A stretch of DNA of 64,000 nt. Source: Podarcis tiliguerta (lineage: Eukaryota). A program made the position numbers and the translations under genes. A model generated the notes under the pieces. It saw only the letters and a list, made by a program, of their open reading frames with translations, was not told the DNA's origin and ran no database searches. Every line of letters starts with the position of its first letter. Within the stretch, counting starts at the first letter, position 1. Where the stretch lies: the NCBI GenBank assembly GCA_965153285.1, contig OZ229112.1; one strand, 5' to 3'. Positions 22,453 to 23,267 of the stretch are shown piece by piece.

Positions 22453-22586
22453 CAGGGGTGTGTGGAATCTGTTTGCTTCCCCTTTCCTCCAGAGGAAGCC
22501 CACCTACAACTCCCTTCAGCCCCAGCCAGCATGCCCAATGGTCAGAGCTGATGGGAGGTGGAAGGCCAAGTGTATCCCCTCTCCCG
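22453..22586. mobile_element. Degenerate palindromic hAT-type MITE overlapping the GRB2-like stop codon
   Basis: cagggg...cctccag...ctacaactccc.tcagccccagccagcatg.ccaatggtcag...tgatgggag matches the MITE copies at 30680-30820 and 19958-20093. Confidence 0.7.
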
Positions 22587-23267
22587 CACACCAGCATCAC
22601 CAGCACCGGTGCTACACCCATCCCATTTCACTGGGGCCACGAAGTTGTTGGGCAACATGCCCCTCCGCCCTTCGCAGGCTCCTTTCCACCAGTTGGGGTC
22701 GGAATCGTCCAGGATCCGAATGACATCTCCACGTCGGAAGCCCAGCTCGCACGCCATTTGAGGCCGGAAGTCAAACAGCGCCCGCACGTAGGTCGGGTAC
22801 CGAGGGCCCTGCTCCATGTCCCGCAGGAGGATGACTCTGTCCCGGGAGACGGAGGTCGTCCGATGGTGCTGCACCAACTCGTTCAGAGAGTTGAAGGCGG
22901 ACGCGCCGAGGTAGTAGTGCCCGCTCAAGTCTCGGAAGACCCTGAAGTGCTGCACGTCGGGCCCCGTCTTGACCGAGAGCGAGAAGCCGCCCGGAGCGCT
23001 CTCGCTCTCGCGGATCATGAACGCGCCGTCGAAGCTCTGCCTGGCCAACGCCTCGTCGGCGATGTCCCGCGGGAGCTTGCCCCAAAACCAGGGGTGGGGC
23101 TTGAAGGCGATGCGGTTCTCGGGGATGAGGCCCTCGCGCCCGCCCCGCTCCGCGTTGGCCCAGCGAGGCTCGGAATCTCTCTCCAAGACCTTCAGCAGGT
23201 CGCCCCGTCGGAAGCTGAGCTCGTCCCAGTTGCGGGGTTGGAAATCGTACTGGGCTACGGCTTCCAT
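22542..23267 (-). CDS. Intronless GRB2-like SH3-SH2-SH3 adaptor (probable retrogene), 241 aa
   Basis: Single uninterrupted ORF, good Kozak (aggATGg). Gap-free collinearity with GRB2 (MEAVAQYDF..., [35 protein letters not shown]); about 134/217 identities by hand; 24-aa C-terminal extension; candidate minus-strand AATAAA at 22000-21995. Confidence 0.9.

What the first reader, a model, noticed from the sequence alone, without database searches (positions are those of the whole stretch)
22542..23267. Intact, intronless, strongly diverged GRB2 paralog (candidate functional retrogene) upstream of YWHAQ
Seen: a single-exon 241-aa SH3-SH2-SH3 ORF with no stops or frameshifts, a Kozak ATG, and a minus-strand AATAAA about 540 nt downstream (22000-21995). 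Known: vertebrate GRB2 is a multi-exon, near-invariant 217-aa protein and is not a neighbour of YWHAQ in human (ADAM17 and TAF1B are). My manual alignment to human GRB2 from memory gives about 134/217 identities (62%) with zero gaps, including GRB2-type segments ([29 protein letters not shown]). Inference: a neutrally decaying processed pseudogene this diverged would be expected to carry stops or indels, so the frame looks selected, suggesting a lineage-specific, neofunctionalised RTK adaptor. It may already exist as an uncharacterised GRB2-like locus in automated annotations.
Basis: partly seen in the sequence, partly recalled or inferred. Interest (0 to 1): 0.9.

Follow-up and report, generated by a model that had tools for sequence, protein, structure and literature searches.

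The report
Conserved lizard GRB2 retrogene
This wall-lizard (Podarcis) DNA holds an intact, intron-free extra copy of the signalling adaptor GRB2 that lacertid lizards and a worm lizard share and that still looks selected, but its expression and function are untested.

Summary
Window 22542-23267 (-) is a single 241-aa SH3-SH2-SH3 ORF. It aligns without gaps to GRB2 residues 1-214 and is 63% identical to the canonical Podarcis GRB2.

It is not unique to this genome. Automatic annotations call the same protein "GRB2-like" in Lacerta agilis, Zootoca vivipara, Podarcis raffonei and P. lilfordi (88-97% identical) and in the amphisbaenian Rhineura floridana (70%; 30 shared derived residues). Canonical GRB2 is also present in these lizards, on a different chromosome-scale contig.

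Several lines point to a selected gene. There are no indels against GRB2. Substitutions avoid family-invariant columns, both since the copy arose (9/63 vs 72/154) and among living lacertids (1/63 vs 28/154). GC at codon positions 1/2/3 is 0.63/0.46/0.86. A CpG island covers the promoter region and CDS.

Much of the divergence runs toward GC-rich codons (lysine to arginine). Lacertids alone lost Trp121, the SH2 residue behind pYxN specificity, and Tyr52 of the N-terminal SH3. They also gained a poorly conserved 24-aa tail.

Best reading: an old Lacertoidea-specific GRB2 retrogene, fast-evolving but constrained, probably with altered binding specificity. No paper describes it.

The parts
22542..23267 (-). 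Complete single-exon CDS of the GRB2-like retrogene (241 codons plus TGA)
23094..23267 (-). N-terminal SH3 domain (aa 1-58). Y7, F9, W36, P49 and N51 are kept. Y37A, N35R and Y52R (codon 23114-23112) are changed in lacertids.
22812..23090 (-). SH2 domain (aa 60-152). The pTyr pocket is kept: R67, R86, S88, S90, S96, H107. K109R is a conservative change. Trp121 is replaced by Gly (codon 22907-22905).
   Evidence: W121S loses pYMNM binding (PMC6435016)
22623..22793 (-). C-terminal SH3 domain (aa 159-215). F165, F167, W193, P206 and N208 are kept. Y209F is conservative. RT-loop acidic residues are replaced (D168R, E171M, E172A).
22545..22616 (-). Lacertid-specific 24-aa C-terminal extension (aa 218-241), created by read-through past the ancestral stop position. 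It shows no codon-position GC pattern, is 3 times more variable than the core, and is predicted to be disordered.
22640..23450 (.). CpG island (GC 0.60-0.68, CpG o/e 0.8-1.1). It runs from about 180 bp upstream of the ATG through most of the CDS. Flanks have o/e 0.0-0.5.
23271..23284 (-). Pyrimidine tract plus CAG, 3 nt before the ATG. This is a possible splice acceptor of an acquired 5'UTR intron (inference only, no RNA data).
21995..22000 (-). The only canonical poly(A) signal (AATAAA) within 1.5 kb downstream, 541 nt after the stop
22420..22448 (.). (TG)14 / (CA)14 microsatellite in the putative 3'UTR

Best explanation
This is a protein-coding retrogene made from a squamate GRB2 mRNA. It was inserted upstream of YWHAQ before lacertid lizards and amphisbaenians (Rhineura) split, and it has been kept since as an extra SH3-SH2-SH3 adaptor alongside the unchanged canonical GRB2. 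It evolves more than 20 times faster than GRB2, partly through GC-biased substitution inside a CpG island, yet the SH3/SH2 folds and the phosphotyrosine pocket stay under purifying selection. In the lacertid lineage the protein changed at three points. It lost Trp121, which forces the pYxN beta-turn binding mode. It lost Tyr52 and Tyr37 of the N-SH3 proline-peptide groove. It also lost several acidic RT-loop residues of the C-SH3. The protein most likely still docks on phosphotyrosine but with a different peptide preference and a different set of SH3 partners than GRB2. What is shown: the ORF, its orthologs, the site-specific constraint, the CpG island and the residue changes. What is inferred: retroposition as the mechanism, transcription, and the altered specificity.
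For: The ORF is single-exon and gapless against GRB2. Orthologs of 241 aa exist in Lacerta, Zootoca and P. raffonei (88-97% identical), and of 217 aa in Rhineura (70%). The clade lacertids+Rhineura has 100/99 support and nests in jawed-vertebrate GRB2 in the ML tree. The window and Rhineura share 30 derived residues. Canonical GRB2 coexists in Podarcis and Lacerta on contigs of different length. Val4 is shared with all squamate GRB2, against Ile elsewhere. Differences from the parent fall in 9/63 family-invariant columns against 72/154 others (OR 0.19, p 5e-6). Among the five lacertid copies, variable columns number 1/63 against 28/154 (p 6.5e-4). Core GC1/GC2/GC3 is 0.63/0.46/0.86, while the C-terminal tail shows no such pattern. 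CpG o/e is about 1 over the promoter region and CDS, against 0.0-0.5 in the flanks. W121G, Y52R and N35R are fixed in all five lacertid copies, whereas Rhineura keeps W121 and Y52. The W121S mutant of the GRB2 SH2 domain loses CD28 pYMNM binding (PMC6435016). AlphaFold2 folds all three domains and leaves the tail disordered.
Against: No ortholog DNA was available, so dN/dS is unknown (look-up of encoding contigs closed). Protein divergence among lacertid genera is high (about 9% in the core), so overall constraint is only moderate. A crude estimate, using the tail as a neutral yardstick, gives 0.13 vs 0.375 variable columns. The amino-acid changes are strongly GC-biased (GARP residues +30/-8, FYMINK residues -29/+8, K 16 to 6, R 13 to 25). 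Much of the divergence therefore need not be adaptive. AU tests do not formally reject placing the clade with GRAP (p 0.10) or outside vertebrate GRB2 (p 0.16). No poly(A) remnant or target-site duplication was identified. The exon structure and location of the Rhineura gene are unknown.
Confidence: 0.7

Rival explanations
1. It works mainly as a decoy or negative modulator of GRB2 signalling, not as a positive adaptor. With the pYxN gate (W121) and the N-SH3 Tyr52 gone, it would fail to couple receptors to SOS. It could still sequester C-SH3 partners or pair with GRB2, much as the SH2-deleted isoform Grb3-3 behaves. This is a sub-variant of the functional-gene reading.
For: W121G and Y52R sit at family-invariant ligand-contact positions. 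W121S abolishes pYMNM binding (PMC6435016). The aromatic core of the C-SH3 is kept.
Against: The pTyr pocket is fully conserved, which a pure decoy would not need. Rhineura keeps W121 and Y52, so this cannot be the gene's original role. No binding data exist.
Confidence: 0.18
2. It is a neutrally drifting processed pseudogene whose frame stays open only because the sequence is GC-rich and stop-poor.
For: The region is 65% GC, and a 405-aa antisense ORF shows that long chance ORFs occur here. The protein evolves fast and with a GC bias. The tail looks unconstrained.
Against: There are zero indels against GRB2 over 214-217 codons in six species, despite 34-39% amino-acid divergence. Substitutions avoid invariant columns both anciently and within lacertids. 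GC2 stays at 0.46 while GC3 is 0.86. CpG o/e of about 1 is retained, whereas a methylated dead copy would decay like the flanks.
Confidence: 0.06
3. It is an ancient vertebrate GRB2/GRAP-family paralog, not a retrocopy, that survives only in Lacertoidea and lost its introns secondarily.
For: AU tests do not reject placement outside vertebrate GRB2 (p 0.16) or with GRAP (p 0.10). The branch is long.
Against: The ML tree nests it in jawed-vertebrate GRB2. Identity is 63-66% to GRB2 against 47% to GRAP, with the same length and no gaps. It shares the squamate-specific Val4. It is absent from every other vertebrate among the profile-search hits. Complete loss of all coding introns is what retroposition produces.
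Confidence: 0.05

Closest known systems
[quoted passage not shown]
   Same: It has the same SH3-SH2-SH3 architecture and aligns residue for residue without gaps (1-214). The pTyr pocket is kept (R67, R86, S88, S90, S96, H107), as are the aromatic cores of both SH3 domains.
   Different: It differs at 81 of 217 residues, whereas GRB2 itself is 93-96% identical from fish to mammal. It is single-exon and lies next to YWHAQ on another chromosome-scale contig. W121G, Y52R, Y37A, Y134H and Y209F are changed, the C-SH3 RT-loop acidic residues are lost, and there is a 24-aa tail.
GRAP (GRB2-related adaptor protein)
   Same: It has the same three-domain architecture and a similar length.
   Different: Identity is only 47%. 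GRAP forms a separate 100/100 clade. Podarcis has its own GRAP (P0097).
Grb3-3 (SH2-crippled GRB2 splice isoform)
   Same: Both are GRB2-derived proteins with a compromised canonical SH2 function that could modulate GRB2 signalling. This functional analogy is inference.
   Different: Grb3-3 lacks residues 60-100 through exon skipping. This gene has a complete SH2 domain with an intact pTyr pocket and is a separate locus. The gecko Heteronotia GRB2-like gene shows exactly that isoform, which marks it as multi-exon and not the same retrocopy.
[quoted passage not shown]
   Same: These are orthologs: 88-97% identical in lacertids and 70% in Rhineura, in a clade with 100/99 support.
   Different: The exact window sequence is not in the protein collection. 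Rhineura lacks the tail and keeps W121 and Y52. No publication discusses any of them.

Membership tests
GRB2/GRAP/GADS adaptor family | SH3-SH2-SH3 domain order in a protein of about 217 aa | tested here: met
   Pfam finds SH3 5-53, SH2 60-135 and SH3 160-213. The AF2 model folds all three domains.
GRB2/GRAP/GADS adaptor family | Conserved phosphotyrosine pocket (Arg betaB5 in the FLIRESES motif, Arg alphaA2, His betaD4) | tested here: met
   R86 (in FMIRESES), R67 and H107 are present.
GRB2/GRAP/GADS adaptor family | EF1 tryptophan (GRB2 W121, GADS W118) that enforces pY-x-N beta-turn binding | tested here: not met
   All five lacertid copies have Gly at position 121. Rhineura retains Trp.
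Canonical GRB2 ortholog | Near-invariant sequence (over 90% identity across jawed vertebrates) and a multi-exon gene | tested here: not met
   Identity to Podarcis GRB2 is 63%, and the CDS is a single exon. A separate canonical GRB2 exists in Podarcis and Lacerta.
GRAP ortholog | Groups with the GRAP clade | tested here: not met
   GRAP forms a 100/100 clade that excludes it in the ML tree. The AU test of a forced grouping is only borderline, at p 0.10.
Processed retrogene | Lacks all parental coding introns, while the parent gene persists elsewhere | tested here: met
   The alignment is gapless and single-ORF. The parent P0173/P0176 sits on other contigs. GRB2's intron-bearing structure is taken from general knowledge and from the exon-skipped gecko isoform.
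Processed retrogene | Poly(A) tail remnant and target-site duplications | tested here: inconclusive
   No A-tract was seen after the AATAAA in the sequence read, and tandem-repeat finding showed only microsatellites. Flanking direct repeats (target-site duplications) were not searched for. These marks would be expected to have eroded in an old insertion.
Functional (selected) gene versus pseudogene | Intact frame in several species and site-specific constraint | tested here: met
   The ORF is intact in five lacertid genomes (four other species plus this window) and in Rhineura. Fisher tests give p 5e-6 and 6.5e-4. Codon-position GC also supports this.
Functional (selected) gene versus pseudogene | dN/dS below 1 and transcription | not testable with these tools

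The most novel reading that the evidence does not exclude
A Lacertoidea-specific GRB2 retrogene, perhaps 150 million years old, was re-tooled in lacertids. By losing the Trp121 gate and the N-SH3 Tyr52, it became an adaptor with a new phosphopeptide and proline-motif specificity, or a natural antagonist of GRB2. It would be driven by its own CpG-island promoter, possibly in the germline. That would make it a natural experiment on how a near-invariant signalling hub can be rewired.
Probability: 0.3. Interest if true: 0.6.

Novelty: new member of a known kind. Interest (0 to 1): 0.45.

Why it matters
GRB2 is among the most conserved signalling adaptors in vertebrates: fish and lizard proteins are 93% identical here. 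A second copy kept for a very long time, free to change a third of its residues while preserving fold and phosphotyrosine pocket, shows which GRB2 residues are fold-essential and which are partner-essential. The lacertid loss of Trp121 and Tyr52, with Rhineura keeping both, gives a clean evolutionary contrast for testing SH2 and SH3 specificity determinants. It is also a well-dated example of a retrogene acquiring a CpG island. The practical impact is modest. Lineage-specific retrogenes are common, the gene is already in automated annotations, and its function is untested.

Tried and rejected
3. Heteronotia (gecko) GRB2-like as a co-ortholog: rejected. It groups as sister at 90/93. However, it has a Grb3-3-type isoform lacking aa 60-100, so it is multi-exon, and it shares only 7 derived states with the window against 30 for Rhineura.
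4. AU tests to exclude a GRAP or pre-vertebrate-GRB2 placement: inconclusive (p 0.10 and 0.16).
5. More orthologs by profile search: none beyond lacertids, Rhineura and Heteronotia.
6. The 226-aa ORF just upstream (23794-24474, -) as a possible transposable-element or promoter donor: no Pfam hit and no homolog. It is treated as a chance ORF.
7. Literature: no paper on a lizard GRB2-like gene or retrogene.
8. The AF2 model built on a 12-sequence alignment has only moderate confidence (mean pLDDT 64). It was used only for domain fold and tail disorder, and no fold search was run.
9. Absence of stop codons as evidence was down-weighted because of the GC-rich antisense ORF.

Full report
**Observation**

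Window 22542-23267 on the minus strand is one ATG-to-TGA ORF of 241 codons. Pfam finds SH3, SH2 and SH3 domains in GRB2 order. phmmer aligns residues 1-214 to human GRB2 1-214 in a single gapless stretch (E 1e-90), so every parental coding intron is absent.

- The ATG coincides with GRB2 Met1 and has A at -3 and G at +4.
- It is preceded by an in-frame TAG 20 codons upstream, with no other in-frame ATG between.
- The only AATAAA or ATTAAA within 1.5 kb downstream lies at 22000-21995, 541 nt past the stop.
- The first coding exon of 14-3-3 theta (YWHAQ) is at 47946-48236 on the plus strand. The ORF therefore lies about 23-25 kb upstream of YWHAQ in divergent orientation.

**Relatives**

| Species | Length (aa) | Identity to window ORF |
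|---|---|---|
| Podarcis raffonei | 241 | 97% |
| Podarcis lilfordi | 231 | 95% |
| Lacerta agilis | 241 | 90% |
| Zootoca vivipara | 241 | 88% |
| Rhineura floridana (amphisbaenian) | 217 | 70% |

- The window is therefore from a Podarcis species. Its exact sequence is not in the collection.
- A profile built from these proteins found no further members in any other vertebrate. The one exception is a gecko (Heteronotia) GRB2-like protein.
- Canonical GRB2 is also present in Podarcis and Lacerta, on chromosome-scale contigs of different length from those carrying the GRB2-like gene. This is an extra copy, not a fast-evolving GRB2.

**Phylogeny**

In an LG+C20 maximum-likelihood tree the lacertid copies and Rhineura form a clade with 100/99 support. 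That clade nests within jawed-vertebrate GRB2, and GRAP is a separate 100/100 clade.

- The stem leading to this clade plus the lacertid stem sum to about 0.66 substitutions per site. Canonical GRB2 terminal branches are mostly 0.02 or less in the same tree.
- The window and Rhineura share 30 derived residues relative to Podarcis GRB2, which supports a single origin before the lacertid-amphisbaenian split.
- All copies share Val4 with squamate GRB2, whereas turtle, bird, mammal, frog and fish have Ile. This is a weak hint of a squamate parent.
- AU tests cannot formally exclude placing the clade with GRAP (p 0.10) or outside all vertebrate GRB2 (p 0.16).

The claim that it derives from GRB2 therefore rests on the ML topology together with four other points. 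Identity is 63-66% to GRB2 against 47% to GRAP. The alignment is gapless and of equal length. The taxonomic distribution is restricted. The gene is intronless.

The gecko protein groups as sister (90/93) but has an isoform lacking exactly residues 60-100, the Grb3-3 exon-skip. It is therefore multi-exon. It shares only 7 derived states with the window. I do not count it as the same gene.

**Is it selected?**

Stop-codon absence is weak evidence here. The region is 65% GC, and the antisense strand carries a 405-aa ORF. Four other lines are stronger.

1. There is no indel against GRB2 over 214-217 codons in six species, despite 34-39% amino-acid divergence.
2. I defined 63 columns that are invariant across vertebrate GRB2, GRAP and invertebrate Drk-type proteins, without using the lizard copies. 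The window differs from its parent at 9 of these 63 columns, against 72 of the other 154 (odds ratio 0.19, p 5e-6). Most of the nine changes are conservative.
3. Among the five lacertid copies, 29 core columns vary. Only 1 of them is among the 63 invariant columns, against 28 among the other 154 (p 6.5e-4). Constraint is therefore still acting within the lacertid crown.
4. Core GC at codon positions 1/2/3 is 0.63/0.46/0.86, whereas the 24-codon tail has 0.58/0.71/0.54. CpG observed/expected is about 0.8-1.1 from about 23450 down to about 22640, against 0.0-0.5 in the flanks. A methylated dead copy of this age would have lost its CpGs. By general knowledge of CpG islands, a persistent island implies germline hypomethylation, as at active promoters.

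Constraint is only moderate, however. Core divergence between lacertid genera is about 9%. If the tail serves as a rough neutral yardstick (9 of 24 columns variable among four species, against 29 of 217 in the core among five), the core evolves at very roughly a third of the tail's rate. True dN/dS could not be computed.

**Nature of the divergence**

Changes from the parent are strongly biased toward amino acids encoded by GC-rich codons:

- G, A, R and P residues: 30 gained, 8 lost.
- F, Y, M, I, N and K residues: 29 lost, 8 gained.
- Lysine falls from 16 to 6, and arginine rises from 13 to 25.

Much of the "strong divergence" is therefore compositional, driven by the CpG island or by GC-biased fixation, and need not be adaptive.

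Against that background, a few radical changes hit family-invariant ligand-contact positions and are fixed in all lacertids. These are W121G in the SH2 domain, and Y52R and N35R in the N-SH3 domain. Rhineura keeps W121 and Y52, so these are second-phase, lacertid-specific events.

- The pTyr pocket is intact: R67, R86, S88, S90, S96 and H107.
- Experimentally, GRB2 SH2 W121S loses binding to the CD28 pYMNM peptide, and Trp121 forces the bent peptide conformation (PMC6435016).
- The C-SH3 domain keeps its aromatic core but loses RT-loop acidic residues (D168R, E171M, E172A).
- Y37, Y52, Y134 and Y209 are replaced, while Y7 and Y160 are kept.
- The earlier scan notes s1-821279 and s1-821468, on this same stretch, say the same. 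I verified the residues independently.
- Lacertids also read through the ancestral stop position into a 24-aa tail that AlphaFold2 leaves disordered (pLDDT below 30). The three domains fold with pLDDT of about 55-87.

**Mechanism proposed**

- A GRB2 mRNA was reverse-transcribed and inserted upstream of YWHAQ in an ancestor of Lacertidae and Amphisbaenia. By general knowledge that is of the order of 150 million years ago; it is not measured here.
- The copy acquired or retained a CpG-island promoter. It may also have acquired a 5'UTR intron: a pyrimidine tract plus CAG sits 3 nt before the ATG. This is inference.
- It persisted as an SH3-SH2-SH3 adaptor.
- In lacertids it most likely still binds phosphotyrosine but no longer in the GRB2 pYxN mode, and with altered SH3 partners.
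- A variant reading is that it antagonises GRB2.

**What could not be done**

There is therefore no ortholog DNA, no dN/dS, no synteny check and no exon structure for Rhineura.
- Literature searches found no paper on this gene.

**Verdict**

This is a real, conserved, lineage-specific GRB2 retrogene. It is already present in automated annotations as "GRB2-like" but is uncharacterised. It is a new member of a known kind, and I rate interest at 0.45.

Noticed in passing
window 45500-47300 and 47946-48236 (+): A very GC-rich, low-complexity CpG-island region is followed by the first coding exon of YWHAQ (14-3-3 theta). The exon is almost identical to the human protein over 97 aa.
   Followed up: partly
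window 23794-24474 (-): A 226-aa ATG ORF lies directly upstream of the retrogene's CpG island. It has no Pfam match and no homolog among 5.8 billion proteins, so it is probably a chance ORF.
   Followed up: yes
window 8358-8663 (+) and 25778-26239 (-): Two ORF translations share a long near-identical peptide stretch in opposite orientation. This indicates two copies of an interspersed repeat (probably a SINE-like element) flanking the locus.
   Followed up: no
window 2224-2808 (+), 16560-16988 (-), 28515-28850 (-): These ORFs look by eye like fragments of retrotransposon proteins (reverse-transcriptase C-terminal type). No Pfam hit was found at E 0.01.
   Followed up: partly
window 21572-21611 and 12746-13123: There is a perfect (TAT)13 microsatellite 400 bp beyond the putative poly(A) site. 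The translation of the ORF at 12746-13123 (-) contains long poly-Phe and poly-Leu runs, which indicates a long homopolymer/simple-repeat tract in the DNA there.
   Followed up: no
P0121 (Podarcis lilfordi ortholog), C-terminus: The P. lilfordi annotation is 231 aa, with a tail that departs from the other lacertids after about residue 222. This is either a real frameshift in the (GGT/GCT)-rich tail or an annotation splice. Either way it fits a weakly constrained tail.
   Followed up: no
P0021/P0126 (Heteronotia binoei GRB2-like): A gecko has a separate, multi-exon, fast-evolving GRB2-like gene (78% identical to Podarcis GRB2) with a Grb3-3-type exon-skipped isoform. This may be an independent case of GRB2 duplication or acceleration in squamates.
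   Followed up: partly
canonical GRB2 of Podarcis and Lacerta (P0173, P0176), position 184: Arg184 is shared by lacertid canonical GRB2 and the lacertid retrogene, but not by other squamates or Rhineura. This could be coincidence or a small gene-conversion event between parent and retrocopy.
   Followed up: no
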